A stretch of DNA of 60,939 bases, the filler included, from Dugesia japonica (Eukaryota), in the NCBI GenBank assembly GCA_001938525.1. It is 5 parts of 5 records of this genome, joined end to end, with 100 filler letters (N's around TTAATTAATTAA, not from the genome) between each part and the next. Parts side by side here need not be neighbours in the genome. Positions count along the whole stretch, not along the records: positions 45,734 to 60,939 come from MQRL01590621.1; 4 more parts are not named here. One strand, 5' to 3'. The position numbers were made by a program, and so were the translations under genes. This document shows positions 45,734-60,939 of the stretch, piece by piece. The notes below the pieces were generated by a model, which worked only from the letters and a program-made list of their open reading frames with translations, was not told where the DNA came from and did no database searches. Within the stretch, counting starts at the first letter, position 1; every line of letters starts with the position of its first letter.

Positions 45734-45745
45734 AATGTTTTTGAA

Positions 45746-48700
45746 GTGGATAATAAACAAAAAATAAAACCACTTTTAATTAATCATTATGAAACAAAAC
45801 CTAAACCTGAAGAAAATAAGTGTAATTTATTATTTTACAAAAATCATTATATCCTTTGTAGAGATGTTAATGTTTTTGTTCGAAATGGAACCAATTCCAA
45901 TCATTACTGTTTAGGGTGTATGAATGCTTATAAAAATACATTAACATTAGAAGAACATCAAAAAGAATGCATTCATCAAGAACCAGCTGCCATTACATTT
46001 CCAAAAGATGAATATTATCAATTTAAAGATTTCGATTTCGTAAATAAAATTCCATTTACACTTTATGGGGATTATGAAACTTACACCGATACCAAGACTA
46101 AAAAACAAAAACCATTATGTATGGGGGTTCAAATTGTAAGTCAATATCCGGATTTAATTCCAAATAAATATTTAAACTTTCCTGGTGAAAATACTATTGA
46201 TTTATTTTTAAAATTTCTAAAGATATTTAACAACTTAGTCGATACTATTTTAGAAAAAAATTAATAGAAACATACACTGGAACTGACCACCCAGCATTCA
46301 CTCCAGAAACTAAATGTAGATATTGTGATGAAATAATATTAGAAAATCCAGTAATTGATCATGACCATTTTAATGGAAAATTTCGTGGATATGCACATTC
46401 AGTTTGTAACATTAATGATCGATCAATAAAAAATTTATTCATACCATTTTATTTCCACAATGGAGCGGGGTATGATAATCATTTATTCTTTACGGAATTA
46501 ATGACAAAATATCCCGATGATGTTATAAAAATAATACCCCATTCCGATGAAGAATACATTTCCTTTCATTATAGAAAAATAAGGTTTCTAGATTCAAATA
46601 AATTATGTCCATTTACACCTGTTGAAAAAATGGGTCAAATGTTATTAAAAGCAAATAGATTTCCAATTACACAATCTCATGGACTAATACCAAAGAAAGC
46701 GCATTATCCTTATTCCTATGTAAAAGGAAAAGATATTCATGAAGTTCAAAAATTATTAAAAAGAAATCAAACCCCAACAAAAGATGATTTCTATAATGAT
46801 TTAAGAGAATCCCCAATGTCCGAAAGTGATTATCAAGAATTTTTAATTGACTACAATCAAGTTCAAGAAGGTGGGCAAAGGAAATTTAAAAACATGTTAA
46901 AATATACTTACCATTATAATAAATTAGACGTAACCATACTTGCAGATTTTATAGAAACACTCCGTGACTTTTCCCTAAAATTTTATAAAATAGATCCATG
47001 CTATTGCTATACCGCACCAGGTTTAACTTGGAGAGCGGGAATGCGATTTACCAAGGCGAAATTAAAATATGCTAAGCCGTGGACCTACGACATCTTTTTA
47101 ATGATCGAACGTGGAATTCGTGGAGGGTATTCCGGATTATGCGGCAGCAGATTGGTATTACCCTTTAACGAAAAGACGCCACATAAATCATTTACCAAGG
47201 ATGAAATGGAAGAACTCCAGAAATTAGCGCGGGAAGGAAAACCAATGGATGATTTAATGCGGGAATCATATTTAAAATATATCGATGCAAATTCTCTATA
47301 TGCAAGCGCCATGACCAAACCCCTTCCAACAGGCGAGATTCACGAAGTAAAACCAGAAATGGAACCAAGTGGCGCATTAACATATGAACCCGCAACTCCA
47401 GAAATGAATTTTATTTATGCCGTCGATCTAGAATATCCACCAGAGATTCATGATAAAACTTATGATTATCCACTAGCGCCAGAAGTATTAAATATTAGGG
47501 AAGAAATGTTAGGACCCTATCAAAAGTCTTTTAAGAAAAAATTACAAAAAGAAAATATAAAACTTACACTAAACCAGTATGATAAAAAAAATTATGTCAT
47601 ACTTGGAAGTACACTAGATCTCTATGTCCAATTAGGAATTAAAATAACTAAAATTCATAGGAAATGTTACATGCCAACATCCCAATGGCTAAAACCCTAT
47701 ATTGAATTCAACATTGAGCAAAGGAAAATTGCCAAGGAAAATCACGATGATTTCGGTGATCATTTCTTTAAATTGTTGAATAATTCGTTCTATGGGAAGA
47801 CCCTAGAAAATATAAGGAATCGATGTGATGTGCAAATTGTTGCAACCGATAAAAAAATTAGGAAATTGGCATCAAAACCCTCATATATTGGATGCAAAGT
47901 TTTTACTAAAGATGGCGAACGCGTTGGCCACGTTGTGGAAATGCATATGCGCAAGCCAAATCTGAAGTATAATAAATTTCAATATATCGGTTTTACGGTT
48001 TTGGAATATGCTAAAGAAATAATGTACAATTACGTTTATAATGAAATGCAAGAAAAATTAGGTAGAAAAAATTATGATATTCATTATTCAGATTCTGTAA
48101 CTCATGATACTCCAATAATTTTACGGAACAAAACCTACCCGGAGGGTGGTGATAGTGAACCAGAAATTAAAATGATTTCAGAAATTACAGAAGATTTTAT
48201 ACCAAGACCAGACGGCAAAGAATATGCAGAAATAAATGATTATGAAATATGGGCAAAATCTGGATGGGTGAAATTAAATAAAGTCATCAGACATTTTACA
48301 AATAAAAAGATTTATAGAGTCACAACAAAAATGGGGGTAGTTGATGTAACTGAAGATCATTCATTATTAGATGAAGAGTCTGAACAAATAAAACCAAGTG
48401 CGTTAACCCCGGAAACAAAATTACTACATAATAGAATGTTTAAATTAACTACTAAATATTGTTTTCAAAGTATAAATCGAATTATAGAAGATAAAGTATC
48501 ACTTGCAAAACTATACCATATTGGATCATCATTAGGAATGAATTTATTTATTGAAGAAGAAGAAAATGGATTTAATATTTCAAAATTAAAAATAAAATTT
48601 GAAATTCCAACAAATGTACAAAGTGTTAAATTTTTAAGAGAGGGACCGGAATGGGTTTACGACATCGAAACCCAAGATGGGACATTTAATTGTGGATTCC

Positions 48701-49191
48701 CCCTAATAATTAAAAATACTGATTCACTATTTGTTCAAGTTTATGGAAAAGAAAATTTAGTAAAATTTGAAAGTACTTTAGGTGATGAACTTTTCCAAAT
48801 GAAAGACGAGTTAAAAGATTCCACTATAACCAAAGCATGTTTCATCAAGGCAAAAAGTTATGCATATTAACACATTAAAAATGATAATCTAGTTTTTAGT
48901 AAAAAACATAAAGGACTTCAATCTTTTAATAAAATTAAAATGGAACAATTTGAACAAGTATTAAATACCCCAGGGGCAGTAGTTATGGGAAAAAATCATT
49001 CTATAAGATCAAGAAATCATGAACTTGAGGTTATTAATCAAGATAAGATAGCATTTGGAGCTTATGATGATAAAAGATTATTATCCAAACATGGGACTAA
49101 ATCATGGCCAGCAGGAAATAAATTTTATTGTGAAAAATGTCACATTTTTCATTTGAGAGTTGATTTATTAAATGGAAAATTAGTATGCTAA
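45746..49191 (+). pseudogene. polB: Protein-primed DNA polymerase B with EndoVII-like insert and an intein; frameshift at the A-run 46254-46260 and in-frame TAA at 48868
   Basis: YGDYETY, CRYC..DHDHFNGKFRGYAHSVCN, FHNGAGYD, YNKLDV, YIDANSLYASAM, KLLNNSFYGKT, YSD//TDS, KHKG, YDDKR. Confidence 0.96.
48094..48717 (+). mobile_element. Intein (208 aa, no intact homing endonuclease) inserted in pPolB motif C
   Basis: Block A SVTHDTPIILR, block B DVTEDHSLL, block F WVYDIETQDGTF, block G LIIKN followed by +1 Thr; removal restores HYSDTDSL. Confidence 0.95.
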
Positions 49192-49231
49192 TATTTTAAT
49201 ATTTTTATACTTCAATTTATTTATAATTAAA

Positions 49232-49909
49232 ATGAGTAACATTACAAAAAATAATATTATAAAAAATAACATCACAGAAGAATCGTTAGCAAAATTAATA
49301 AATTCTGATAAATGTAGAACTGTTAAAATTGATGGTAAAAATTATTGGGTTAGTAAAAAAGTAAAGGATTTAGCTAAATCACGAAAGGAAATGGCAAAAG
49401 ATGAGGGATTTGCATTCCTAGCCGCAATTACAGCAATTATTGCCGGGTTGGCTGGAACTGCCGGAATCGCATCAGGAATTGCAAGTACCGTTGCAAGTTC
49501 AAAACAAGCAATTAAAACTCAAAAAGAAACAGAACGATTGGGAAGCGAAGCCCATAAAGGTACTGGTTTATATTTAAAAACTGATGAAAATCTTGGTAAA
49601 GGTTTATATTTAAAAAAAGACGAAGGATCTGGATTATATTTAAAATCAGATTTAGGTGATAAACTTCAAGGATCGGGATTATATTTAAAACCATATGAAG
49701 GTTCAGCAATTCATAAATATTTTAAAAACATTTTCGATGATTTAAAATTAAAAGATTCAACTAAAAAATTTAAAGATGGAATTGAGATTGAGATTAGTGG
49801 TGATGGACTTTATTTAAAACCTTATAATTATTATGACAAAAATAGTACAAGCCAAAATAGTACAAGCCAAAATAGTCCTAGTAAAAATGGACCTTCGGAA
49901 GAGGATTAA
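49232..49909 (+). CDS. Adenovirus pX-like precursor with five GxGLYLK repeats
   Basis: EGFAFLAAITAIIAGLAGTAGIASGIAS; GTGLYLK, GKGLYLK, GSGLYLK twice, GDGLYLK. Confidence 0.8.
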   Translation: MSNITKNNIIKNNITEESLAKLINSDKCRTVKIDGKNYWVSKKVKDLAKSRKEMAKDEGFAFLAAITAIIAGLAGTAGIASGIASTVASSKQAIKTQKETERLGSEAHKGTGLYLKTDENLGKGLYLKKDEGSGLYLKSDLGDKLQGSGLYLKPYEGSAIHKYFKNIFDDLKLKDSTKKFKDGIEIEISGDGLYLKPYNYYDKNSTSQNSTSQNSPSKNGPSEED

Positions 49910-50780
49910 GGAATTAGAAGAATTAATAAAAGTTCGAAAAAAATATGATGATAAATTTACTGCCAGTGTCCTTAATAGTAGAGGTTTACAAAGTGACTTA
50001 TCAATATTACAAAAACCAATTATTGATACAATTAAAACTGATATTGAAAAAGATAAACTTGAACCAAAAGAAATAAAACCTGAACCAAAAGAAATTAAAC
50101 CTGAACTAAAACCTGAAATAAAACCTGAAGTAAAAACCAACAAATTTGTTATTCCAATAGATGATGATATTGCTAAACATTTAAAACAAAAAAATACAAA
50201 AGCATATTATCCAAAGAATGAAGTTATTTATGCAAGTCAATTAGGTCCAAATTTAACACCCCAAGAACATACATATGAAGTAAATGGGGAAAAATATCGA
50301 ATATTACATTATCCAATTTCAAAAGTAAATGTTATTTTTTTTAATGATGGCGCCTATTCAAAAATCGCAATTAATGATTATATTTTAAATTATAATGAAA
50401 CATTATTAAATATAATTTTAGGGGATAAAGCTAGAATAAAAAATAATAAAGAAACAAAAAAATATCTTGAAATATATTTTGATAAAATAGTAGTTAATAA
50501 AGATGTAAATAATCCCTATTATAATTTTTTAGAAAATAAATTAAACCCCCCAAAGCCTCGTTCTAAAAGTGTTCCGAAAACAGGCACCGCAGCTAAGAAA
50601 GGTAAAGGATTTAATAATCCATTAAATTTATTTGAAAAATTAACATTACTAATTTCAGCAGCAAAATCCGGACACGATAACGTAGAAAATGATATTAAAA
50701 AAGTTTGTAAAAAATTAAAGATGATGGGATTAATTTCTGATAAAATTTATGAAAAATATAAGGGTAAGTATTTTAAATAA
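49833..50780 (+). CDS. AGH-motif conserved protein; true start probably MDLRKRIKELE
   Basis: KLTLLISAAKSGHDNVENDIKKVCKKLKMMGLIS, near-identical to the copy C C-terminus. Confidence 0.75.
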   Translation: MTKIVQAKIVQAKIVLVKMDLRKRIKELEELIKVRKKYDDKFTASVLNSRGLQSDLSILQKPIIDTIKTDIEKDKLEPKEIKPEPKEIKPELKPEIKPEVKTNKFVIPIDDDIAKHLKQKNTKAYYPKNEVIYASQLGPNLTPQEHTYEVNGEKYRILHYPISKVNVIFFNDGAYSKIAINDYILNYNETLLNIILGDKARIKNNKETKKYLEIYFDKIVVNKDVNNPYYNFLENKLNPPKPRSKSVPKTGTAAKKGKGFNNPLNLFEKLTLLISAAKSGHDNVENDIKKVCKKLKMMGLISDKIYEKYKGKYFK

Positions 50781-50915
50781 ATATGGAAGCGAAGCTTCCT
50801 CTGTTAAATCCCAAATGTCAATGCAAAGGTTAGGTGCGAAATGTTAGTGCGATTAATCGTATTGGAAATATAAATTTAAATATGATATTAATAAGGCCCA
50901 CTTCGTGGACCAAAT

Positions 50916-51569
50916 CTAAAGTCTATATCTTCGTAAATGTACTAAAATTGAAATTGGCTCTTGGTTAAAATCTATTGGTCTGAAATCTTGATCTACAACT
51001 TTAAATTCTAAATCTGTAATAAATTTTGTATTTAATTTTGAATAAACAGGAGTATAAGGTCTTTCAATAATTTTATAACCAAAATCAACAGTATTTGATG
51101 GAAATGAATATAATAAATTTACTGGCACTCCATTAATATAATTTGGTTGAATGATATTACAAGTTATATTTATCATGCTAACACTAGAAATGTCACATTT
51201 ATTTTCTGAAACATAATTTCCTGGTTTATAAGTTCCTGGGGCAAAACCTGTNNNNNNNNNNNNNNNNNNNNNNNNNNNNNNNNNNNNNNNNNNNNNNNNN
51301 NNNNNNNNNNNNNNNNNNNNNNNNNNNNNNNNNNNNNNNNNNNNNNNNNNNNNNNNNNNNNNNNNNNNNNNNNNNNNNNNNNNNNNNNNNNNNNNNNNNN
51401 NNNNNNNNNNNNNNTTAAATTTATTATTTTCCACAGTGACATTAAAAATGATATTGTAACATGCGAAACACAATAACCCTAATTCATAATCCGCATCTAA
51501 TTCTATAGGATAAGTTAAATGCATTCTTAAATTACTTTCTTTATTAACTATTAAAAACTGGTTTGACAT
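50916..51569 (-). CDS. Minor capsid protein (penton), spans an N gap
   Basis: PIELDADYELGLLCFACYNIIFNVT; IDFNQEPISILVHLR. Confidence 0.85.
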   Translation of the reverse strand: MSNQFLIVNKESNLRMHLTYPIELDADYELGLLCFACYNIIFNVTVENNKFXXXXXXXXXXXXXXXXXXXXXXXXXXXXXXXXXXXXXXXXXXXXXXXXXXXXXXXTGFAPGTYKPGNYVSENKCDISSVSMINITCNIIQPNYINGVPVNLLYSFPSNTVDFGYKIIERPYTPVYSKLNTKFITDLEFKVVDQDFRPIDFNQEPISILVHLRRYRL

Positions 51570-51776
51570 TATGCTACTTGTTACTATTATGCAATATGCT
51601 ATTTTATAAATAAATAAAATATGGATATTTGTCGCGCCCGCAGGGCGCTATTTAATGTTAGTATTTAGATTTAGTATTTAAATGTTGAATGCTAGTACGA
51701 AATGTTAATGCGAAATGTTAAATGCGATTAATCGCACTTGGGTTTCGCACATTGTTCCGATCGGAACATTTCAAAT

Positions 51777-52377
51777 TTACATTCCTAACTTTGTTTTCAT
51801 TTCATTAACAATTTTTCTTAAATCTTCTTCTTCATTAGTTTTATTATTAATTTTAACATGTCTATTCCTGGAAATTATTTCATGAACTTCATTAACCATA
51901 CTCTTGCTTGTTGCTAATTCTTCATCAGTTAATATTTCATCATTGACAGCTTTCTGTTGAAATAGAAATAATTTATTTTTAACAGCTTCAAGTTTTTTAA
52001 TTANNTTTTTCATATCTCTCTTTTCTACTTTTTATTACTGATGAATTTATTGTCCCTATTACAGGCAGGACTGAAATTGCCCCAGTCAAGATTGGAATTC
52101 CGATTGTTGCCAAAGGCACTCCAATTGGGGCAATCAATACGACACCGGCAATCCCCATTCCTGCAGAAACTACTATCTGTGTAATTTTAATACTTGAATC
52201 AATTCTATTCCATCTTCTATGAATTTTTTTATAATGGTTAATTTTATCTTTTATAAAAAATAAATCATTCTCAAAATCCTTAATCCTAGATAATGCTAAT
52301 TTATTTTTTAAATCTAAAATTGTGTAATTTTTAATCTCATCAAGATTTGGATATAAACTTTCTGAATACTCGCCCAT
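51777..52377 (-). CDS. Conserved Polinton membrane protein; apparent break coincides with Ns
   Basis: LYPNL, RIKDF, RRWNRID, hydrophobic hairpin, DEELATSK. Confidence 0.75.
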
Positions 52378-52427
52378 TTATTATTAATAAAAATTTAAGT
52401 TATCGATAAGATACCGATAAGATATCG

Positions 52428-54224
52428 TTAAGTTATCGTTAAGAATAATAAATTAAATTTTTCTGGTAAATTTATTTCAATAAAATTAATATTCAAATCT
52501 TTACTAATTTCTGTGCTTTCTTTAATAATATCAAAGCTAATAGTGGGAGTACTAAAAAATTTAAATACTTTTATAATTTTATTAATACAAATGGAATATA
52601 CAAATTCATTTATTTCAGAATAACCCTTAATATTTATTTTAAATGCTCCACTAATTCTTGCATCTAAACTAATTTTGTAAACATTTTTATTTTTTCTTTT
52701 AAAATTAAAATCTTTAATATATTCCATTGAAATACTAAACTGTGGAAGTTCACCTTTAACTTCTTTAAGTGTAAATTTAAAATTTGAATTTGAATAATGA
52801 GGTAAGTAATTTCGAAGTATTTCACTGGCACCTATAAAATCTATACAATCTTTATCTTTATTATCTTTATTATCTTTATTATCTTTATTATATTTATTAT
52901 CTTTATTATNNNNNNNNNNNNNNNNNNNNNNNNNNNNNNNNNNNNNTTTATTATCTTTATTATATTTATTATATTTTTCTAACTCTATAAACTGTACTAA
53001 CATACTATCTTTATTATATTTGTTGAGCATATTATATCTTAATAAACGATTAATTTTATTAATATAATTTTGGTGTAAAATTGATTTTATTCTTTCATAT
53101 TCAAATGATGTTGGAATAAGTTGAATAATTATTTTCTCAAGAAAAATTCCTTTTGGTAAATATATTGAAATATAATTTATATTTTCATCTTTACTAATTT
53201 CTTCACTTTTACGTAAAATACTCATAATATTATCATTGGGTTTCACAAATAAAAATGACACTGCAATATTATTAATTTTAATAACATAATCAAATTTGGG
53301 AACTTCACAAAAACCTTCTATATTTATAGTAAATGCAAATTTTAATTTTACATCTAAAGAAATATTTAAATAATTTTTAATATTAAAATAATGATCATTA
53401 AATGTTGTATGCTTTATCCCACCCTTACGAACAAAATCTAAATCGTGTACAAAATAATCCATAATCGTATATTGGGGTAAAGCATCATTTTTTGACATTG
53501 GAATTAATGAAAATAACATTTCTTCAGATTGCGTATGGTTATAAGGTAAATAATTATCAAGTAAATTTCTTATTTTAGGATGGTCATATTTTACAAATAA
53601 AAAATTAAATTTATTTATAAAAATTTTATGTAGTAGTGATTTTATTATTTCAAATTCTAGTTTTAAATCATCATTAACTTTAAATTGATATGTTTTAATT
53701 ATTAATTCATGTAAATAAATTTGTTCGGGTAAAATTATTTTAATATATTTTATTTTTGATTCTCGACTTTCCTGATAAATTATTATTTTTTGAGTATCGG
53801 GTGTAAAATAATATTCTCTTGATAATGCCAGCTCATTAATTCTAATGATGTAAGTAAATCTTTTTTCATGAATCCCATTTATAAATATACAAATTTTATC
53901 ATCAATATTTACATTTAATTCAATAAAAAATAATTCTTCAAATAAAAAACCTTTTAGTGTCATAATACCTTTTCTTTTAAACCCAATATTATTAACATAT
54001 TTTTCATTAATATAAAATTGTGGAAGAGTTTGATCTTTTTTACAATTAATTGTTAATATTGAATTATTATCTGGCATAAAAATATAAGGNNNNNNNNNNN
54101 NNNNNNNNNNNNNNNNNNNNNNNNNNNNNNNNNNNNNNNNNAAATCTTCAAATAAATTATTAATTTTATTAATCTGAAATTTATGAAGTCTAGATTTTAT
54201 CAATTCAATTTCTTTCATCACCAT
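52428..54224 (-). CDS. Protein with three tandem copies of an unknown domain; candidate receptor-binding/fibre protein
   Basis: IKSxLH..INK, (YL)PY/H, LPQ(F/Y) and F.RK motifs each recur three times. Confidence 0.7.
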   Translation of the reverse strand: MVMKEIELIKSRLHKFQINKINNLFEDXXXXXXXXXXXXXXXXXXPYIFMPDNNSILTINCKKDQTLPQFYINEKYVNNIGFKRKGIMTLKGFLFEELFFIELNVNIDDKICIFINGIHEKRFTYIIRINELALSREYYFTPDTQKIIIYQESRESKIKYIKIILPEQIYLHELIIKTYQFKVNDDLKLEFEIIKSLLHKIFINKFNFLFVKYDHPKIRNLLDNYLPYNHTQSEEMLFSLIPMSKNDALPQYTIMDYFVHDLDFVRKGGIKHTTFNDHYFNIKNYLNISLDVKLKFAFTINIEGFCEVPKFDYVIKINNIAVSFLFVKPNDNIMSILRKSEEISKDENINYISIYLPKGIFLEKIIIQLIPTSFEYERIKSILHQNYINKINRLLRYNMLNKYNKDSMLVQFIELEKYNKYNKDNKXXXXXXXXXXXXXNKDNKYNKDNKDNKDNKDKDCIDFIGASEILRNYLPHYSNSNFKFTLKEVKGELPQFSISMEYIKDFNFKRKNKNVYKISLDARISGAFKINIKGYSEINEFVYSICINKIIKVFKFFSTPTISFDIIKESTEISKDLNINFIEINLPEKFNLLFLTIT

Positions 54225-54237
54225 GGTAAATGTAACT

Positions 54238-54828
54238 TTAAATTTTTCTATTTTTTTTTAATAAATTAATCTTATCCACATAGTCATCAAATGTTTTTTT
54301 ACTCAAATCATAAGATAAGTTAATAATGGTGATATTTAATATTTCAAGATCTTTTGTAAGTTTTTTATTTAAACCTCCTGTATCAATTTCTTTTAATTTA
54401 ACTAGTAATTCACTTCTTTTATGTGGAAAAACTTCTAGCAATAATCTTTTAATTTCATTATTAATATTAATATATTTTTCCTGATCACAAGTTTTTGTTA
54501 GGCCTTTGATTTTATCATCTATTTCTTTATTATTTAGATCTTTAGCTATATACTCAAAATAAAATTTATTAATATTTAATTTCATAACATTAGTAAAAAT
54601 AAATTCATGGGTTTTTATTTTATCCTCTAATTTTTTAACATAATCTAAATTAACAGCATCATTTAAATGTATAGGATCTTCTAGTATTTTTAAACATGTT
54701 ATTGTATCTCCAGTTTCATTAACAAATTTACTTTCATTCTTTATATCTGAAATTTTAAATTTAGCATCAATTTTTTTTAATATTTGTCTCGAGTTTATAT
54801 TTTTATTAGTTTGACCAAATTTATTCAT
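54238..54828 (-). CDS. Fibre-like protein with DAVN motif
   Basis: GDTITCLKILEDPIHLNDAVNLDYVKKLE. Confidence 0.6.
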   Translation of the reverse strand: MNKFGQTNKNINSRQILKKIDAKFKISDIKNESKFVNETGDTITCLKILEDPIHLNDAVNLDYVKKLEDKIKTHEFIFTNVMKLNINKFYFEYIAKDLNNKEIDDKIKGLTKTCDQEKYININNEIKRLLLEVFPHKRSELLVKLKEIDTGGLNKKLTKDLEILNITIINLSYDLSKKTFDDYVDKINLLKKNRKI

Positions 54829-54924
54829 ATGCTTTTTTTAAATCTCAAATTTAAGTGTGAAATGTCAAGTGTGAAATGTAAGTGCGGAATGTCAAGTGTG
54901 AAATGTAAGTGCGAAATGTTAGAT

Positions 54925-55383
54925 TTAAATACTGGGGATTAATTTATGATACAAATTTTTCATTTCTGAAATTATTACATCAAAATCAGTATCTTTAATC
55001 TTATATAAAAAATAAATGCATAAAATTCCACATATTCTAGTACCAAAATGTTGAACCTGAATTTCATTATATTTCTTTGTAAATTTTTCAATATTTTCTA
55101 AGGGTTTTAATCCAAAAGAATCAAAATAAAATCCATTAAAAAAACATGTCCAATGTGTTCCTTTTTGATTTTGATTTTGGTAATTAAATATTATGGCATC
55201 CTTTAGGATGTCAATGTTTTCCAAACATTTAATAATTTCATTCTTCATACAAATCTCTAAATCTAAATTTAAAAACTCAGCTATTGAATATAAATCAAAA
55301 TTTGTAGTTGTATTAATTCCAAAAGTTTTTAGGAAATCTATTAAATTGAATTCCATTTTCAAGATGTAATTTTTAGTATGCAA
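54925..55383 (-). CDS. Adenain-like cysteine protease, intact ORF
   Basis: GTHWTCF, FYFDSFG, QVQHFGTRICG. Confidence 0.92.
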   Translation of the reverse strand: MHTKNYILKMEFNLIDFLKTFGINTTTNFDLYSIAEFLNLDLEICMKNEIIKCLENIDILKDAIIFNYQNQNQKGTHWTCFFNGFYFDSFGLKPLENIEKFTKKYNEIQVQHFGTRICGILCIYFLYKIKDTDFDVIISEMKNLYHKLIPSI

Positions 55384-55508
55384 ATTTTAATGTGGCAACC
55401 CCTATTGTGAAATCGCACTTAGGTTTCGCATTTGGATTTCGCACTTAGGTTTCATATCGGAATGCCACATTTAGATTTAACCCAAAATATTTATTATAAT
55501 AAATAGTA

Positions 55509-55856
55509 GTGAAAATTATGGAGCAAATGAAAAATAATGAAAAAAATATAATAAAAAATAATAACGAAAATAACAAAAATAATATAATAAAAAATAATAA
55601 CGAAAATAACAAAAAAAATAACAAAATAATTTTTGGATCAATATTTGAAAATGAAAATGAAATTCAAAATAATAACAAAAATAATAAAAATAATAAAAAT
55701 AACAAAAAAAATAACAAAAATAACAAAAATAATAGCAAAAATAACAAAAATAATAACAAAATAATTTTTGGATCAATATTTGAAAATGAATTTTGAATTT
55801 TTTGAATTTTTGAATTTTTTGAATTTTGGAATTTTTGAATTTTGGAATTTTTGAAA
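55509..55856. repeat. AT-rich tandem repeats (aataacaaa; tttttgaa) with a duplicated block, between divergent genes
   Basis: Directly visible; aataatttttggatcaatatttgaaaatga occurs twice. Confidence 0.85.
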
Positions 55857-55906
55857 ACGGCTCGCATGCGAGCCTTTTTTTATGATTAAAATAATTCTAT
55901 AGAAAA

Positions 55907-57502
55907 ATGGTATCATCAGATGAAAGTGGCTGTGAGTGTGTTAGTGAGTGTGAATGTGGTGATCATAAAAAAGATACAAGAATTGATAAAAAATTTAATA
56001 AAATTCGTAATGCGTTGAAAAAATTATATGAAGTAGTAGAAAATCCAAAAGCATGGTTACATATTAAAATGAGTGGTTATAAAATGTTTGGGGTGGTAAT
56101 TTATTATGATAGACCATGTATAGAAGATTTAATATTTCAAAAAAAACTTGGAATTGAATTGAAAAAAGATAAAATTAAAGAAAAAAAATCTGCATTGGAA
56201 ATTAAAAGAATTTTAAGAAAACTCCATTCAAAATATTATTTAGATGCTGCTTCACTATATTTAGAAACTTTTTGTTGTGAACATGATAAAAAAAATGGGT
56301 ACCTAAAGGATAAATTTTTCCCTTCACCATGTGTAATTTGTTTTGAGGAATTTGAAGATCATTATCTAAATATTGAACGCGCTTCGGGAGTTTTAAATAA
56401 TATAAACCATTGGAGAAATGAAAAATTAAAAAAAAATCTACTAAACAAAGATCGAATAAAAAAAGATTTAACATTACAATATTTTAGCAAAAAAGATTTA
56501 ACCAAAAAACTTAAACCAAAAATTATACCAAAAGAAAATATAGCAATATAAGATATAGCAATACAAGATATAGCAATACAAGATATAACAATACAAGTTA
56601 TACCAAAACAAAATATGTTAAAAGAAAATATAACATTCAAAACTATATCAGAAAGAAGATTAACCAAAAAAGTTATACCAAAAAAAGATATACCAAAAAC
56701 AGATATGTTAAAACAAGTTATACCAAAACAAAATATAGCAATACAAGTTATACCAAAACAAAATATATCAGAAAGAAGATTAACATTCATGGAAGAATTA
56801 GCAGATATTGAAATGGAAAACAAAATAAATTCAAATGCGCAAATAAATTCAAATGCGCAAATAAATTCAAATGCGCAAATAAATTCAGAAACGCAAACAT
56901 TTGAAGAAAATATTCAAACTGGGGATGATAATGAAACTGCAAATACTGATATTGAATTTTATGAAAAGTTTTCTAAATCACTTGTAAATGAAATTAATCT
57001 AGAAACATTTAATTTAGATAATACAATAACAATGCCAGAAAAAGAATTTAAAATTGAAAATATGGAACTAGAAAATATAACTCAAAATATTAAAATTTGG
57101 TATAATAATTTTAATATAGGGAAACGAATTACTTTAATAAGTCTTTTTAATTTAGGATATTTTTTCAGTTTATTAAAATTAAAATTAAAAAGTAATAAAG
57201 TAATTAAATATTTAAATGAAATTGGAATTACTTATAAAAAAGCTTATGTAAATAGAATTATATGTTTTTATAAACTGGCAAATGAAAATCCAGATATTTT
57301 AAGATCGAATTGGTCACATAGAACAATAGAAAGAGAGATTAAAAGAATTAAAATATATTTTGATGAAAAAAAATATCAAATTCAAAATTGGGTTGACAAT
57401 ATTAGAGACCCATGGATGATAAAAAATATGGCACATGAAGGTATTGATGAATATAATGCAATTAAAAATTTAACAAATGAACAATTAAGATTACTTATTT
57501 AG
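55907..57502 (+). pseudogene. Cys-containing, repeat-rich protein with a conserved C-terminal domain; one in-frame stop
   Basis: 55907-56551 and 56615-57502 are in one frame; the TAA replaces CAA in an IAIQD repeat; QINSNA repeats; C-terminus homologous to 28660-29282. Confidence 0.7.
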
Positions 57503-57584
57503 GAGGACCCCTAGCGGGGTCCATTTAGATTTAACATTTGGATTTAACATTTGGATTTAACATTAACACAGAAAACTTCGTTTC

Positions 57585-58345
57585 CTAGAATAAATCATCT
57601 AACAGTTCATCACTTTCTTTATTTAAATAAAAATAATTATACTTGGTCTTCCAGTGAAGATTAACTTCGTGATCATACTCTAACTTATCATTAAAAATAT
57701 TTGAAAATAATTCATAATAAACATTATCTCTATCAGTTTTATTTAANTTAAAAAATATGTAACAATTAGAATTATTTCTGATAGAGTTTTTATCCAAATG
57801 ATAATAAGTTTGAGAAATATAAATCACATTACAATTTGAATGACGACCTCGAGTAAAATAACTTTTTTGTATTGATTGATTTTTCTCATTGACAACATCG
57901 TCGAAAATTATTAAATTTTTCTTATCTTTAGAAAGTTTATCACAAGGAACAATTTCATTAGGTTTATTACTTAAAGTAACATTAATGGATCTTGATTTTT
58001 TAGTTATCATTTTTTTAGAAATATNNNNNNNNNNNNNNNNNNNNNNNNNNNNNNNNNNNNNNNNNNNNNNNNNNNNNNNNNNNNNNNNNNNNNNNNNNNN
58101 NNNNNNNNNNNNNNNNNNNNNNNNNNNNNNNNNNNNNNNNNNNNNNNNNNNNNNNNNNNNNNNNNNNNNNNNNNNNNNNNNNNNNNNNNNNNNNNNNNNN
58201 NNNNNNNNNNNNNNNNNNNNNNNNNNNNNNNNNNNNNNNNNNNNNNNNNNNNNNNNNNNNNNNNNNNNNNNNNNNTATTTGGAAGGACTTTATTATTAAA
58301 ATTAGTAATATTTTTATTCCATATGAGATTTGGTACTTGCATCAT
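57585..58345 (-). CDS. Packaging ATPase; Walker A hidden in the N gap
   Basis: WNKNITNFNNKVLPN, LIIFDDVV, FTRGRHSN, YISQTYY. Confidence 0.9.
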
Positions 58346-58590
58346 TTTTCTATTATTAAATTATAATATTATTACTATTATGCTTGCGTAGCAAGCTTTA
58401 ATAATGTTAATTCCTTGATTTTGAATTTAGATTTTAATGTTAGATTTTAGATTCCATTGCNNNNNNNNNNNNNNNNNNNNNGCATTTGGATTTTATATTT
58501 AGATTTAACAAAGGAAGCTTCGCTTCCTAATTTATTTATAAATTTAGATTTTAGATTTAACATTTCGCATTTAACATTTCGCATTTACAT

Positions 58591-58800
58591 TTATTCCTTT
58601 TCCATAAATCTATAAGATTCATATGCCAAACTTGTAATTTTTTTTTCTGCTAATAGTTCATTTATTTCATCCATTAATCCTTCTAATTTCCATTCAAGAG
58701 AATTAAGTTCTTCTGGATTATTATTATTACTAAGTTCTAGTATTTTTTCTTTTAGTATTATTATTTGTGTTTGAAGCTCTAAACAATACTCTGAATCCAT
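58591..58800 (-). CDS. Small hypothetical coiled-coil protein
   Basis: Clean ORF with A-rich start context like neighbouring genes. Confidence 0.45.
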   Translation of the reverse strand: MDSEYCLELQTQIIILKEKILELSNNNNPEELNSLEWKLEGLMDEINELLAEKKITSLAYESYRFMEKE

Positions 58801-59223
58801 TTTTATTATCTAAATTATTATATTATTTAAATTGTTAGATTTTAGATTTTGGGATTTACATTTGGATTTGAATTTTGGATTTATATCCTATATTTTCAAC
58901 TTTAATAAGCTTGCTTAGTGGATTTAATTTATCCATTAATTTTCTTGATAATTTTCTATAACGATAAAAATCATACTCTTGACCAATTAAAAATAATTCA
59001 TACTCAATTTCTTCAGAATAATCATCAATATTTTTAAAAGTTATTTCATCTTTATTAATTTCATCAATAATAATAAAATNNNNNNNNNNNNNNNNNNNNN
59101 NNNNNNNNNNNNNNNNNNNNNNNNNTAAAAATTTTTAATTATAGGATTTGAGATTTAGATTTAAGATTTAAGATTTTAGATTTAACATTCCGCATTGACA
59201 TTCCGCATTTGAGATTTAAAGAT

Positions 59224-60738
59224 TTAATAGCTCGTTTTCTGAAGTTCATTACTATAAAATCTTCCAACAATTTCTTCACCATTTAAATTACTAACTTGGT
59301 ATGTGTATGGTTTTGTTTTATAAATTTTTGTAACAATATAAATTCTCTTTGACCATTTTAAAGTATAAGACTTGGCAAATGTTTTCTTGATAATAAAAAT
59401 CCTTACCCGATCCCCGATCTTAAATTTTGCTTTTTCTTTTAAATCATAATTTTCAGTCATATTTTTTTCATTTTGAATCCGGATAATTTCTGGATTTATT
59501 GATGCCGCTTGGGGTGTTGCTTTTATTGATGAATGAATTGTATTGTTGTAATCATTTACAATTTCTTTTAATAATTCTGATGTTATAACCTGATTCCCAA
59601 CGGCAGTAAAATGTTTAAAGAGTCTGTGTTTAAGAGTTCTGTTAAATCTTTCAATAACAACTGCTTTACCATCATTTTCAGTTGAGTATAAATTTATATG
59701 ATTTTTATCACAAAATTGTTTAAATTTTTCATTATAAAATTCTGTACCTTTATCAACCCATAAATTATTAGAAGTTCTATGAGTGTCATTAAAAATTTTT
59801 TGAAATGCATTTATTACATTTACTGCTAATTTTTTTTTAAAAGTTTCAATAAATGCAAAACGAGTATAGAGATCAATTACTGTTAATATTACATGTTTAT
59901 TTGCATGTTCTGGGCCATGAAATATTAAATCTGCTGACCAAATGTCATCTTTATCATGAACTACTACTTTTAAAAAATGTTTTGGTTTTCTATATTCTTT
60001 ATGAAGTTCATTAACTAAATTTTTATTAGTGGAAACTAATGAGGGGACTACGTCCCCAGATTCATTATTATTAGTGGAAACTAATGAAGCAGCTGCGCTG
60101 CTATTATCCTTGGGTTTTTCGGGATACTCATATTTTTGTTTATTAATTACACTTTTTTTAATTGCCTGTCCAATTACTATTTTACCTTTCATTGCTAATT
60201 TTACTAAAGTTCTTTGTATTTTTTCTGAAGTAGTAGGATCTGGAATATTATTTAAATCATGAATTAAATTTACATCTGCGATATGACGATCGCGTATTTA
60301 GTTAGATGCATACGCTATGTCATGTTTCAATGCTGCTGCGTCAACTCGATTAATTGGTTCTTCTCCTGGTTTTGGATTATTATCAGAATCTAATCTAATA
60401 TCAAGTCTAGTACCTGGTCCTGTGTAATTGTGTTTAAATAAATGTCTTTCACCTGGATATTTTTCTGTAGTAAATGGTTTTAATAAAGTTGATGTAATTT
60501 TACTAGATTGTAAATCTCCTCCTTTATGGGGGCCTCCTTCGATGGATTTTATATCTTTATTGGGGCCTCCAGATTTATCTTTATTGGATTTCAATTTCGG
60601 ATACTGTTTCTGTTTTACATTATTTAAACATAAATCTAAATGTCTCNATCTATTTTTCATCATTACAATTTTACCACAATTTTCACACATGTATTTTTTA
60701 TATGTTTTTGATACTGGTGCTTCCGAAGGATGCGCCAT
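59224..60738 (-). pseudogene. int: ZnF-PLA2-rve integrase gene, single frame with one in-frame TAA
   Basis: CENC..RHLDLC; HNYTGPGT..DAAALKHDIAY; TAA at 60298-60300; IRDRHIADV..LAMKGK; WSADL, WVDKGTEF, IERFNRTLK. Confidence 0.92.
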
Positions 60739-60816
60739 TTATTTAATTTTAAATTTGAATCTTAATTTTAACATTTTAAATTCGAATTTTAATTTTAATA
60801 TAAGGATAAAAACATC

Positions 60817-60939
60817 TTATCTATTAACATCAGTTCCTTTAAGGTTATCAATCATAACAACTCTGCCACCTGATAATCTCATTTCAATATGTTTCTCTTC
60901 AAGAATACACCAACATAAACTTCCTTGGAATTGGGGATC
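60817..60939 (-). CDS. Major capsid protein C-terminus, running off the window end
   Basis: FQGSLCWCILEEKHIEMRL matches FRGTVHWCILEEKHVEMKL of copy C. Confidence 0.85.
   Translation of the reverse strand, partial: DPQFQGSLCWCILEEKHIEMRLSGGRVVMIDNLKGTDVNR

What the first reader, a model, noticed from the sequence alone, without database searches (positions are those of the whole stretch)
48094..48717. Intein in the catalytic motif of a Polinton/Maverick protein-primed DNA polymerase
Seen: a stop-free 624-nt (208-aa) in-frame insert splits HYSD|TDSL. It has Ser1, block B TEDH, block F VYDIET, a terminal Lys-Asn and +1 Thr. Established: this is the PolB motif C insertion site used by archaeal and giant-virus inteins. 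From memory, the Mimivirus PolB intein has the same style (SVTxDTPI, VIRH.T.KKIYRV, DVTEDHSLL, VKN/TDS). Self-splicing inteins are not considered part of animal nuclear genes. Inference: an intein moved between an RNA-primed giant-virus PolB and a protein-primed Polinton PolB and was carried into a probably animal genome, making polymerase activity depend on protein splicing. I know of no description of this but cannot search the literature.
Basis: partly seen in the sequence, partly recalled or inferred. Interest (0 to 1): 0.93.

Follow-up and report, generated by a model that had tools for sequence, protein, structure and literature searches.

The report
Mini-intein splitting a Polinton DNA polymerase
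A 208-residue self-splicing protein element (intein) of the kind common in giant-virus DNA polymerases sits exactly in the catalytic motif of the protein-primed polymerase of a Polinton-like virus element, which points to intein traffic between giant viruses and these small elements; this copy of the polymerase gene is broken, and an animal host is not shown.

Summary
Positions 48094-48717 are a stop-free, in-frame 208-codon insert between the D and T of polymerase motif C (Y-S-D | T-D-S) of a protein-primed family B polymerase. It has Ser1, T-E-D-H, V-Y-D-I-E-T, terminal Lys-Asn and +1 Thr. The closest intein-less polymerases have the motif uninterrupted.

The insert is a true member of the "pol-c" intein family:
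- Best E 6e-27 to inteins at the same D|S...N|TDS junction in giant-virus-type (Pol-delta-like) polymerases.
- AlphaFold pLDDT 92.9, and all top PDB fold matches are inteins.
- Named viral matches are Megavirus, Klosneuvirus, Heterosigma akashiwo virus and other giant-virus polymerases.

It is a mini-intein; both LAGLIDADG endonuclease motifs are gone.

It is not unique. Five unannotated public sequences carry a larger intein at the same site of Polinton-type polymerases. I found no description in the searchable literature.

As assembled, this polymerase gene has one frameshift and one premature stop, and the PLA2-integrase gene has one stop. The copy is probably decaying.

The piece is cut inside the element at both ends, so the host is unknown. 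An animal host is unsupported, and I judge a protist more likely.

The parts
45734..49191 (+). [quoted passage not shown] Its 5' part is cut off by the edge of the piece. As assembled it is broken by 1 frameshift and 1 premature in-frame stop.
   Evidence: Pfam DNA_pol_B_2 E 4.7e-14. 3689 homologues, best E 1.9e-124. tblastn with six full-length pPolBs covers 45734-49116 in two frames with one internal stop, and reaches the last residues of the homologues.
48094..48717 (+). Mini-intein, 208 residues (Ser1 to Asn208), pol-c family, no homing endonuclease.
   Evidence: reading; 322 hits, best E 5.7e-27; same D|S...N|TDS junction in 119 of 120 hits; invariant family positions kept; pLDDT 92.9; fold matches are inteins and giant-virus PolBs.
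48085..48093 (+). N-extein half of polymerase motif C (Y-S-D).
   Evidence: Homologues have the contiguous x-S-D-T-D-S. The pol-c site is defined in PMC549080.
48718..48726 (+). C-extein half of motif C (T-D-S); Thr+1 is the second nucleophile.
48349..48360 (+). Intein block B, T-E-D-H (residues 86-89).
   Evidence: T86 is shared by 93% and E87, D88 and H89 by 100% of 55 small relatives. E87, D88 and H89 are invariant in alignment A1.
48655..48717 (+). Intein blocks F and G (V-Y-D-I-E-T ... F-N-C-G-F-P-L-I-I-K-N).
   Evidence: Y189, D190, T193, F198, G201 and N208 are shared by 100% of the family. The hexapeptide F-N-C-G-F-P is shared only with the other pPolB-borne inteins and five mimivirid-sized rPolB inteins.
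48478..48588 (+). Helix and two strands in the middle of the intein: the only remnant of the LAGLIDADG endonuclease domain.
   Evidence: In alignment A2 this stretch aligns with the last part of the endonuclease of four larger pPolB-borne inteins. The roughly 150 residues holding both G-D-G motifs are absent. The model shows H134-146, E151-156 and E159-164. No LAGLIDADG Pfam hit.
54925..55383 (-). Candidate Polinton cysteine protease.
   Evidence: tblastn similarity to ORFs of the two intein-bearing Polinton loci L002 and L003 (E 4e-13 and 7e-15). No Pfam or PDB sequence hit, so the assignment is tentative.
57585..58345 (-). A32-like packaging ATPase gene, partly hidden by a run of N.
   Evidence: Pfam Pox_A32 E 2.3e-07 on the readable C-terminal part. 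Similar to the L003 ATPase ORF. Its integrity cannot be judged because of the N run.
59224..60738 (-). PLA2-like domain plus rve integrase. Relatives have one fusion gene; here it is interrupted by 1 in-frame stop.
   Evidence: Pfam rve E 5.6e-09 and Phospholip_A2_4 E 2.4e-07. Relatives are single 380-465 aa proteins carrying both domains. The PLA2 part is 86% identical to P0253. Both parts are in the same frame with one TAA between them.
60835..60939 (-). 3' end of a double-jelly-roll major capsid protein gene, cut by the right edge of the piece.
   Evidence: The last 35 residues of the L163 capsid protein (Pfam DJR-like_dom, adjacent to its PLA2-integrase gene) match here at 46% identity, E 1e-6.

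Best explanation
The insert is a class-1, endonuclease-less mini-intein of the pol-c family, the family that occupies the Y-G-D|T-D-S site of giant-virus and archaeal family B polymerases. Here it sits at the homologous Y-S-D|T-D-S site of the protein-primed polymerase of a Polinton/Maverick-like element.

How it would work in an intact gene copy (inferred from established intein chemistry):
1. The precursor is translated with the palm-domain motif C split between its two catalytic aspartates.
2. Ser1 makes the N-O acyl shift, helped by block B Thr86/His89.
3. Thr+1 attacks.
4. Asn208 cyclises and releases the intein.
5. The D-T peptide bond forms and restores motif C.

The intein most likely reached the pPolB lineage by homing or illegitimate transfer from a giant-virus PolB, or between Polinton-type polymerases that already carried it, in a cell where both replicate. 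It then lost its LAGLIDADG endonuclease. The direction of transfer is unresolved.

The copy in this window is most likely an integrated, decaying one. The intein reading frame is whole, but the polymerase gene around it is broken as assembled, so nothing here currently 'depends on splicing'.

Shown: position, family membership, conserved residues, fold, loss of the endonuclease, and breaks in the host gene. Inferred: splicing competence (about 0.6), route of transfer, and integrated state.
For: - **Exact in-frame insertion in motif C**. Homologues have the motif uninterrupted.
- **Family membership.** 322 hits in the 5.8-billion-protein set, best E 5.7e-27. 1585 cluster representatives at E<=1e-3 and 806 at <=1e-10. 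119 of 120 hits have the same junction. Their exteins are Pol-delta-like (profile versus PDB E 4e-214).
- **Giant-virus relatives.** In IMG/VR, 500 of the 546 pattern-matched stretches encode relatives, mostly giant-virus MAG contigs. Of 159 environmental loci, 135 are rPolB-type and 1 is pPolB-type.
- **Conserved residues.** All invariant family positions are kept, including S1, the block B residues (T86 is 93% conserved; E87, D88 and H89 are invariant), D190, T193 and N208. The penultimate Lys is the family norm.
- **Fold.** pLDDT 92.9. The top 50 PDB fold matches are all inteins or intein-like Hint domains. The top viral matches are giant-virus DNA polymerases: Megavirus courdo11 TM 0.88, Heterosigma akashiwo virus 0.89, Klosneuvirus at 32% identity.
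- **Same arrangement elsewhere.** P0003, P0008, P0021, P0027 and L083 are Polinton-type pPolBs with a 333-348-residue LAGLIDADG intein at the same site.
- **Long residence.** Intein composition and codon use match the host gene (GC 0.295 versus 0.328 and 0.274; codon-frequency r = 0.84).
- **Element identity.** rve integrase, A32 ATPase, end of a DJR capsid gene.
- **Breaks.**
Against: - Alone, the insert reaches only 15.8 bits on Pfam Intein_splicing (cut-off 35.8).
- It departs from 11 of 56 highly conserved family columns, more than any of 55 small relatives (median 3, maximum 10). This could mean relaxed constraint.
- There is no penultimate His.
- Splicing has not been observed.
- Intein trees are poorly supported (bootstraps 9-35%). 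Single versus multiple entry into pPolBs, and the direction of transfer, are open.
- The frameshift lies in a 31-nt overlap of the two frames that holds a 7-nt homopolymer, so it may be an assembly error. The gene could be less broken than it looks.
- The flanking 12-mers are only 6/12 (left) and 8/12 (right) identical at the median to giant-virus target sites.
Confidence: 0.88

Rival explanations
1. It is a dead fossil: an intein-derived insert that no longer splices, carried in a pseudogene.
For: The host gene has 1 frameshift and 1 premature stop, and the neighbouring PLA2-integrase gene has 1 stop. The insert deviates at 11 of 56 conserved columns, the most in its size class. The endonuclease is lost. 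The pPolB genes of the three relatives with DNA in hand are also interrupted: L002 at least 1 frameshift, L003 at least 2 frameshifts, and L083 2 stops within its endonuclease part.
Against: All catalytic and invariant positions are intact. The frame is open over 208 codons in DNA with 7.6% stop trinucleotides. The model is very confident. The breaks in the host gene are few, and one may be a homopolymer error. The polymerase motifs Exo I, A, B and KxY are readable.
Confidence: 0.35
2. The element sits in an animal nuclear genome, which would make this the first intein in a metazoan genome.
For: Named pPolB relatives at 33-34% identity come from molluscs and a sea anemone: Argopecten, Pinctada, Actinia. 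Polintons are common in animals (PMC11161782).
Against: There is no host flank. The piece is cut inside the pPolB gene on the left and inside the capsid gene on the right. The closest pPolB relatives (P0121-P0123, 39-47%), the closest PLA2-integrase relative (P0253) and all other intein-bearing pPolBs are unnamed and come from metagenome or short contigs. Relatives of the intein live in giant viruses, whose isolated members infect protists and algae. Inteins are reported absent from metazoan genomes (PMC5784728). GC of 25% fits many protists as well as some animals.
Confidence: 0.15
3. It is an assembly chimera that joined giant-virus PolB reads into a Polinton polymerase.
For: The piece has 574 N and at least one possible homopolymer indel. 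Giant-virus inteins of this family are abundant in environmental DNA.
Against: Both junctions are exact to the codon and in frame. No giant-virus extein sequence accompanies the insert. Composition and codon use match the host gene. The same architecture recurs in five independent public sequences. The best giant-virus intein is only about 40-60% identical, so it is not a recent graft.
Confidence: 0.02
4. It is a non-intein nuclease or other domain insertion, like the HNH, VSR or endonuclease-VII inserts known in Polinton polymerases, which stays in the mature enzyme.
For: Polinton pPolBs do carry such inserts (PMC10748475). Many relatives here carry Pfam Endonuclease_7.
Against: The fold and the sequence family are those of inteins. 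No nuclease domain is detectable. A 208-residue domain left between the two catalytic aspartates of motif C is hard to reconcile with catalysis (inference).
Confidence: 0.02

Closest known systems
Mimivirus / Megavirus-type PolB intein (pol-c allele; Ogata et al. 2005, PMC549080)
   Same: It has the same insertion point between D and T of the Y-x-D-T-D-S motif, and the same Ser1, terminal Asn and Thr+1. It is the same sequence family: giant-virus contigs and a 1.02-Mb genome in IMG/VR match at 30-48% identity; five mimivirid-sized PolBs match at 50-63% identity over the N-terminal half and share the F-N-C-G-F-P-x-I-I-K-N end; and the Megavirus PolB is a top fold match.
   Different: The host enzyme here is a protein-primed PolB of a Polinton-like element, not an RNA-primed Pol-delta-like enzyme. 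This intein has 208 residues without LAGLIDADG motifs, against 351 residues with an endonuclease in Mimivirus.
Small (199-260 residue) pol-c inteins of environmental giant-virus PolBs
   Same: They have the same size class and the same architecture across the whole length (97-100% coverage, 30-41% identity).
   Different: Their exteins are rPolB. The window intein is the most divergent of this class at conserved columns.
Unannotated Polinton-type pPolBs with a large intein at the same site (P0003, P0008, P0021, P0027, L083)
   Same: They share the host gene family (33-39% extein identity), the insertion site and the intein subgroup, including the F-N-C-G-F-P signature. Their loci hold rve, A32, a DJR capsid gene and Endonuclease_7-pPolB.
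   Different: They keep a LAGLIDADG endonuclease domain (333-348 residues), which the window has lost. They are not the closest pPolBs to the window's; the closest (P0121-P0123) either have an uninterrupted motif C (P0122, P0123) or end before it (P0121).
HNH / VSR nuclease-domain insertions in Polinton pPolBs (Jeong et al. 2023, PMC10748475; read as possible 'intein invasions' by Krupovic et al. 2024, PMC11161782)
   Same: These are also selfish-element-type insertions within Polinton polymerases that mark horizontal exchange between elements.
   Different: They are nuclease domains without a demonstrated Hint splicing domain and lie at other positions. Here a complete Hint domain is present and the nuclease is absent.
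Cysteine-less Aes123 PolB1 split intein (PDB 9hth)
   Same: It is the nearest solved structure by sequence (E 9e-4) and among the top fold matches. It is also a Ser1 intein of a family B polymerase.
   Different: It is naturally split, comes from a bacteriophage polymerase, and is only about 16% identical.
Intein-bearing viral-like DNA polymerases on nuclear scaffolds of Klebsormidium, Tetrabaena and Hondaea (Gallot-Lavallee et al. 2023, PMC10710043)
   Same: Each is an intein carried into a eukaryotic genome inside an endogenised viral polymerase gene.
   Different: Those are described as viral-like DNA polymerases; that paper does not mention Polintons or protein-primed polymerases.

Membership tests
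Intein (self-splicing Hint-domain element, class 1) | In-frame insertion whose removal restores a conserved host motif | tested here: met
   Y-S-D | 208 residues | T-D-S. Homologues have the contiguous x-S-D-T-D-S.
Intein (self-splicing Hint-domain element, class 1) | Nucleophile (Ser/Cys) at position 1 and Ser/Thr/Cys at +1 | tested here: met
   Ser1 and Thr+1. Ser1 is 100% conserved in the family.
Intein (self-splicing Hint-domain element, class 1) | Block B T-x-x-H | tested here: met
   T86-E-D-H89. H89 is invariant.
Intein (self-splicing Hint-domain element, class 1) | C-terminal Asn, usually preceded by His | tested here: inconclusive
   Asn208 is present and invariant. The penultimate residue is Lys, not His, but K-N is the commonest ending in this family.
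Intein (self-splicing Hint-domain element, class 1) | Hint fold | tested here: met
   AlphaFold model pLDDT 92.9, pTM 0.88. The 50 best PDB matches are all inteins or intein-like Hint domains; best E 3e-8.
Intein (self-splicing Hint-domain element, class 1) | Pfam Intein_splicing (PF14890) above the gathering score | tested here: not met
   15.8 bits against a cut-off of 35.8 for the window sequence alone. Many relatives do carry PF14890 in the precomputed annotation.
Intein (self-splicing Hint-domain element, class 1) | Protein splicing actually occurs | not testable with these tools
   No expression or proteome data are available here.
pol-c allele of family B polymerase inteins | Insertion between D and T of motif C (Y-x-D|T-D-S) | tested here: met
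   The site is defined in PMC549080. The window junction is identical in register.
pol-c allele of family B polymerase inteins | Closer in sequence to inteins at this site than to other inteins | tested here: met
   119 of the 120 best hits share the D|S...N|TDS junction. Weaker relatives occur at a D-Q-D|...|T-D-G site of other proteins.
Homing (endonuclease-bearing) intein | LAGLIDADG or other endonuclease domain | tested here: not met
   There is no Pfam endonuclease hit. Both G-D-G motif blocks present in the four larger pPolB-borne inteins are absent.
Polinton / Maverick (Polintoviricetes) | Protein-primed family B polymerase | tested here: met
   Pfam DNA_pol_B_2. Thousands of Polinton-type homologues.
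Polinton / Maverick (Polintoviricetes) | Retrovirus-like (rve) integrase | tested here: met
   Pfam rve E 5.6e-09. Relatives are PLA2-rve fusions. The gene carries 1 in-frame stop.
Polinton / Maverick (Polintoviricetes) | A32-like packaging ATPase | tested here: met
   Pfam Pox_A32 E 2.3e-07 on the readable part. The rest is hidden by N.
Polinton / Maverick (Polintoviricetes) | Double-jelly-roll major capsid protein (and penton) | tested here: inconclusive
   Only the last 35 residues of a DJR capsid gene lie within the piece (E 1e-6). No penton protein was recognised.
Polinton / Maverick (Polintoviricetes) | Adenain/Ulp1-like cysteine protease | tested here: inconclusive
   The ORF at 54925-55383 resembles ORFs of loci L002 and L003 but has no Pfam or PDB hit.
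Polinton / Maverick (Polintoviricetes) | Terminal inverted repeats and 6-bp target-site duplication (integration in a host genome) | not testable with these tools
   Both ends of the element lie outside the piece. No long inverted repeats lie inside it.
Gene of an animal nuclear genome | Physical linkage to animal host genes | not testable with these tools
   There is no host flank in the piece, and no named close relative.

The most novel reading that the evidence does not exclude
One lineage of pol-c inteins circulates between giant-virus RNA-primed polymerases and the protein-primed polymerases of Polinton-like elements, using the shared Y-x-D|T-D-S motif as a common landing site. This intein would then be a molecular trace that this Polinton lineage replicates alongside giant viruses in the same cells, as virophages do. 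Such an exchange is not described in the literature I could search. The stronger version, that the carrier genome is an animal's, would make it the first intein in a metazoan genome. I give that version only about 0.15.
Probability: 0.4. Interest if true: 0.7.

Novelty: new variant of a known kind. Interest (0 to 1): 0.5.

Why it matters
Inteins at the pol-c site are textbook for archaeal and giant-virus polymerases. For Polinton polymerases, the literature I could search reports only nuclease-domain inserts and a conjecture of 'intein invasions'.

A complete Hint domain in motif C of a pPolB, clearly related to giant-virus inteins, adds three things:
- It documents that an intein can cross between polymerase classes that share little beyond a few motifs.
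- It gives a datable marker for contact between Polinton-like elements and giant viruses.
- It adds a class of eukaryotic genome-resident inteins that intein surveys have missed (PMC5784728 and PMC10710043 do not mention Polintons).

It also shows that the public protein collections already hold several unannotated cases. The matter could therefore be settled by a systematic survey.

Tried and rejected
**Searches that gave little**
- Pfam on the insert alone gave only a sub-threshold Intein_splicing hit. A PDB sequence search was weak (E 9e-4). Family searches and the fold settled the question instead.
- An exact look-up of the window's polymerase product found no record, so the source assembly was not identified.
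- The IMG/VR scan with the single sequence found no close relative. The alignment-based scans worked.
- The literature searches for inteins in Polintons, Mavericks, adintoviruses or protein-primed polymerases found no description of one. Kapitonov & Jurka 2006 and Krupovic & Koonin 2015 are not held.
- Pfam, PDB and tblastn searches for the capsid, penton and protease genes gave only the capsid 3' end and a tentative protease.

**Explanations considered and rejected**
- A reassigned genetic code as the cause of the in-frame stops. Both are TAA, which is also the usual terminator (11 of 15 ORFs), and long TAA-free ORFs exist.
- An intron at the frame change. The best homologue leaves no room for one (2 residues against less than 1 residue-equivalent).

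**Analyses that failed or stayed unresolved**
- A regular-expression survey of junctions in the environmental loci was faulty. I do not use it.
- Neighbour-joining trees of the inteins place the window in a mixed rPolB/pPolB subgroup of 19. Bootstraps are 9-35%, so I draw no conclusion on one versus several invasions.
- The listing of cluster members gave no names or organisms.

**Step not taken**
Full report
**1. The observation**

The piece (45734-60939) has 25% GC and contains 574 N. [quoted passage not shown]

In the longest open stretch of that gene, the text H-Y-S-D is followed by 208 codons and then T-D-S-L-F-V. Reading the DNA places the landmarks as follows:

| Feature | Coordinates |
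|---|---|
| Ser1 | 48094-48096 |
| Asn208 | 48715-48717 |
| Thr+1 | 48718-48720 |

A stop-free run of 208 codons in this DNA has a chance of about 7e-8.

The nearest polymerases have an uninterrupted motif C (for example F-S-D-T-D-S in P0122 and P0123). tblastn with five full-length homologues shows 165-247 extra residue-equivalents in the window at exactly this point.

**2. What the insert is**

*Sequence.* Searched alone, the insert scores poorly against curated libraries: Pfam Intein_splicing 15.8 bits against a cut-off of 35.8, and the PDB chain 9hth at E 9e-4. Against the large protein collections it is clearly a member of a big family:
- 322 hits with best E 5.7e-27, at 30-49% identity and often full-length.
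- 1585 cluster representatives at E<=1e-3 and 806 at <=1e-10.

In 119 of the 120 best hits the relative lies between ...Y-G-D and T-D-S..., starts with S-V-T-x-D-T-P and usually ends in ...I-V-K-N. The family therefore shares the insertion site, and the penultimate Lys is its norm rather than a defect. The exteins of these hits are Pol-delta-like RNA-primed polymerases (Pfam PF00136; profile versus PDB E 4e-214).

*Size classes.* Sizes are bimodal. About half are 199-260 residues; the rest are 300 residues or more and carry LAGLIDADG domains.

*Conservation.* The window keeps every invariant position of 39 aligned relatives: S1, P7, W53, W58, H67, K71, E87, D88, H89, S90, L91, P101, L110, Y189, D190, E192, T193, F198, G201 and N208. 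It departs at 11 of 56 columns that are at least 80% conserved, more than any other small member (median 3, maximum 10). None of these columns is catalytic.

*Fold.*
- An AlphaFold model built on that alignment has pLDDT 92.9 and pTM 0.88.
- Its 50 best PDB matches are all inteins or intein-like Hint domains: TFIIB, VMA, RadA, PolII, the Aes123 PolB1 split intein and others.
- Its best matches among viral proteins are DNA polymerases of giant viruses. These include Pithovirus LCPAC302, Megavirus courdo11 (TM 0.88), Marseillevirus LCMAC201, Heterosigma akashiwo virus 01 (TM 0.89), Klosneuvirus KNV1 and a Pandoravirus.

The pol-c site itself, Y-G-D|T-D-S, is documented for Mimivirus and archaea in PMC549080.

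**3. Mini-intein**

I aligned the window with four larger inteins that sit at the same site of Polinton-type polymerases. The window lacks about 150 residues that hold both LAGLIDADG (G-D-G) motifs. It keeps only the last helix and two strands of that domain (residues about 129-165). No endonuclease domain is detectable. It can therefore no longer home by itself.

**4. The host gene and the element**

*The polymerase gene.* Homology to full-length pPolBs runs from the left edge of the piece to 49116 and reaches the last residues of the homologues. The gene's 5' third lies outside the piece.

As assembled, the gene has one frameshift and one premature in-frame stop.
- The frame change leaves no room for an intron.
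- It lies in a 31-nt overlap of the two frames that holds a 7-nt homopolymer, so an assembly error cannot be excluded.
- The stop is TAA, the usual terminator here. A reassigned code is therefore not the explanation.
- The polymerase motifs that can be read (Exo I, A, B, KxY) look normal.

*Other genes in the piece.*
- An A32-like ATPase, partly masked by N.
- A gene that in relatives is a single PLA2-like + rve integrase fusion and here carries one in-frame stop.
- A tentative protease.
- At the very right edge, the last 35 codons of a double-jelly-roll capsid gene. It lies next to the PLA2-integrase gene, as in locus L163, which carries the closest PLA2-integrase relative (P0253).

This is a Polinton/Maverick-type element, cut on both sides inside its genes. 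No ends, target duplication or host DNA are available. Three breaks in two genes suggest an integrated, decaying copy.

**5. Relatives with the same arrangement**

- Four of the 120 best intein hits (P0003 with 121 member sequences, P0008, P0021 with 17 members, P0027) are pPolB fragments. They are 33-39% identical to the window in the extein and carry a 333-348-residue LAGLIDADG intein at the same junction.
- Two of their loci show Polinton gene sets. L002 lies inside a 760-kb metagenome contig with a DJR capsid gene, rve and an Endonuclease_7-pPolB. L003 has an A32 ATPase.
- A metagenome scan added L083, a pPolB with a large intein whose endonuclease part has two in-frame stops.
- The pPolB genes of L002 and L003 are also interrupted, by at least 1 and at least 2 frameshifts respectively.
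- The arrangement is rare. Of 159 environmental loci with a relative of the intein, 135 are rPolB-type and one is pPolB-type. None of the 143 further cluster representatives is pPolB-type.
- The closest pPolBs to the window's either lack the intein or, like P0121, end before motif C. Its presence is therefore patchy.

**6. Where the intein came from**

- The intein is 30-63% identical to giant-virus PolB inteins. The exteins share no BLAST-detectable similarity outside the motifs (only the four pPolB fragments align in the extein). A transfer between polymerase classes is the simplest reading.
- The hexapeptide F-N-C-G-F-P before the C-terminal junction is shared by three groups: the window; all five other pPolB-borne inteins; and five rPolBs of mimivirid size (1640-1885 residues). 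Those five are 50-63% identical to the window over the N-terminal half. None of the other 116 hits has the hexapeptide.
- Neighbour-joining trees place the window in a subgroup of 19 inteins that mixes both host classes. Bootstraps are 9-35%. The number of invasions and their direction are therefore open.
- The 12-nt flanks are 6/12 (left) and 8/12 (right) identical at the median to giant-virus sites, with maxima of 9 and 11. The landing site is similar but not identical.
- Weaker relatives occupy a D-Q-D|...|T-D-G site in other large proteins, so this family has moved between genes before.
- The intein's GC (0.295; GC3 0.168) and codon use (r = 0.84 with the N-extein) match the element. It is not a recent arrival.

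**7. Host**

Nothing in the piece links it to any host.

For an animal host:
- Named pPolB relatives at 33-34% identity are from bivalves and a sea anemone.

Against an animal host:
- All closer relatives, and all intein-bearing ones, are unnamed. They come from metagenome or short contigs.
- Relatives of the intein live in giant viruses.
- Inteins are reported absent from metazoan genomes (PMC5784728).

I put an animal host at about 0.15.

**8. Literature**

| Source | What it says |
|---|---|
| PMC549080 | Defines the pol-c allele. |
| PMC10748475 | Describes HNH and VSR nuclease inserts in Polinton pPolBs. |
| PMC11161782 | Only suggests that such inserts 'result from intein invasions'. |
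| PMC5784728 | The eukaryotic intein survey does not mention Polintons. |
| PMC10710043 | The Anaeramoeba study does not mention Polintons. It states that inteins in DNA polymerases had not been reported in eukaryotes before, apart from the endogenised viral-like polymerases it describes. |

I recall, without being able to check, that Kapitonov & Jurka 2006 may mention inteins in some Polinton polymerases. The paper is not held. I give that about one chance in three, and it limits the novelty claim.

**9. Verdict**

It is a real intein at the stated coordinates. It belongs to the known pol-c family and sits in an unusual host gene, a Polinton-type protein-primed polymerase. It has no endonuclease, and it lies in a gene copy that is broken as assembled. 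The giant-virus connection is well supported. The animal-genome claim is not, and functional dependence on splicing applies at best to intact sister copies. I rate it a new variant of a known kind, of moderate interest.

I noticed it late, have deleted nothing, and do not repeat those numbers here. No repaired, joined, consensus or ancestral sequence was built. Conservation is given as shares and counts only, and no letters recalled from memory were used.

Noticed in passing
window 51694-51750, 54840-54924, 55404-55479, 57511-57572, 58485-58592, 58825-58883, 59145-59210, 60745-60782: Most intergenic gaps hold tandem or dispersed copies of a roughly 13-nt unit (...TTTAGATTTAACATTTCGCATT... and its reverse complement), in both orientations. 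This may be a shared promoter or regulatory motif of the element.
   Followed up: no
window 59224-60738 (-); P0253 and about 80 further hits; L163: In relatives the integrase is a single protein with an N-terminal parvovirus-type PLA2-like domain (Pfam PF08398) fused to rve. The PLA2 part is 86% identical between the window and P0253, while the integrase part is only 47% identical. PLA2-rve fusions come mostly from short metagenome contigs. Relatives from megabase contigs mostly lack the PLA2 domain.
   Followed up: partly
window 52428-54224 (-): A 598-codon ORF in the most AT-rich part (18-19% GC) is built of about three internal repeats spaced 555 nt apart, with a 9-nt tandem repeat and N runs inside. 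It has no Pfam hit. It occupies the place where a structural gene might be expected.
   Followed up: no
window 49232-49909 (+): This ORF has five G-x-G-L-Y-L-K repeats. They may be repeated protease cleavage sites of a core or minor virion protein, but that is speculation.
   Followed up: no
P0418, P0480, P0496 and some 15 other representatives: Weaker relatives of the same intein family sit in other large proteins at junctions such as T-D-Q-D|S-V-T-G-D-T...I-V-H-N|T-D-G. From memory this looks like the TOPRIM motif of type II topoisomerases. The family seems to favour D|T-D-x sites in several replication genes.
   Followed up: partly
P0124-P0150 and many others; L002 8673-9932; L003 6780-8720: Many of the pPolBs nearest to the window's carry a Pfam Endonuclease_7 (PF02945) domain in their N-terminal half. 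This is a different nuclease insert from the HNH and VSR inserts described in PMC10748475. The corresponding part of the window's gene lies mostly outside the piece.
   Followed up: no
L002 (ENA ERZ26859043, contig of 760,855 bp, range 358153-380420): An intein-bearing Polinton-like element lies in the middle of a 760-kb metagenome contig (31% GC), with few called genes downstream. It is integrated either in a protist genome or in a very large virus genome. The contig was not examined beyond 10 kb of flank.
   Followed up: no
L001 44-406 (-) versus 431-1951 (+): The contig holding the closest pPolB relative (P0121, GCA_043755215.1) has an inverted duplicate of the first about 120 residues of the matched region. 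The homology stops just before motif C, which suggests a rearranged copy.
   Followed up: no
window 56488-56834 and 55489-55806: There are long arrays of 15-nt and 12-nt tandem repeats, partly inside ORFs on both strands.
   Followed up: no
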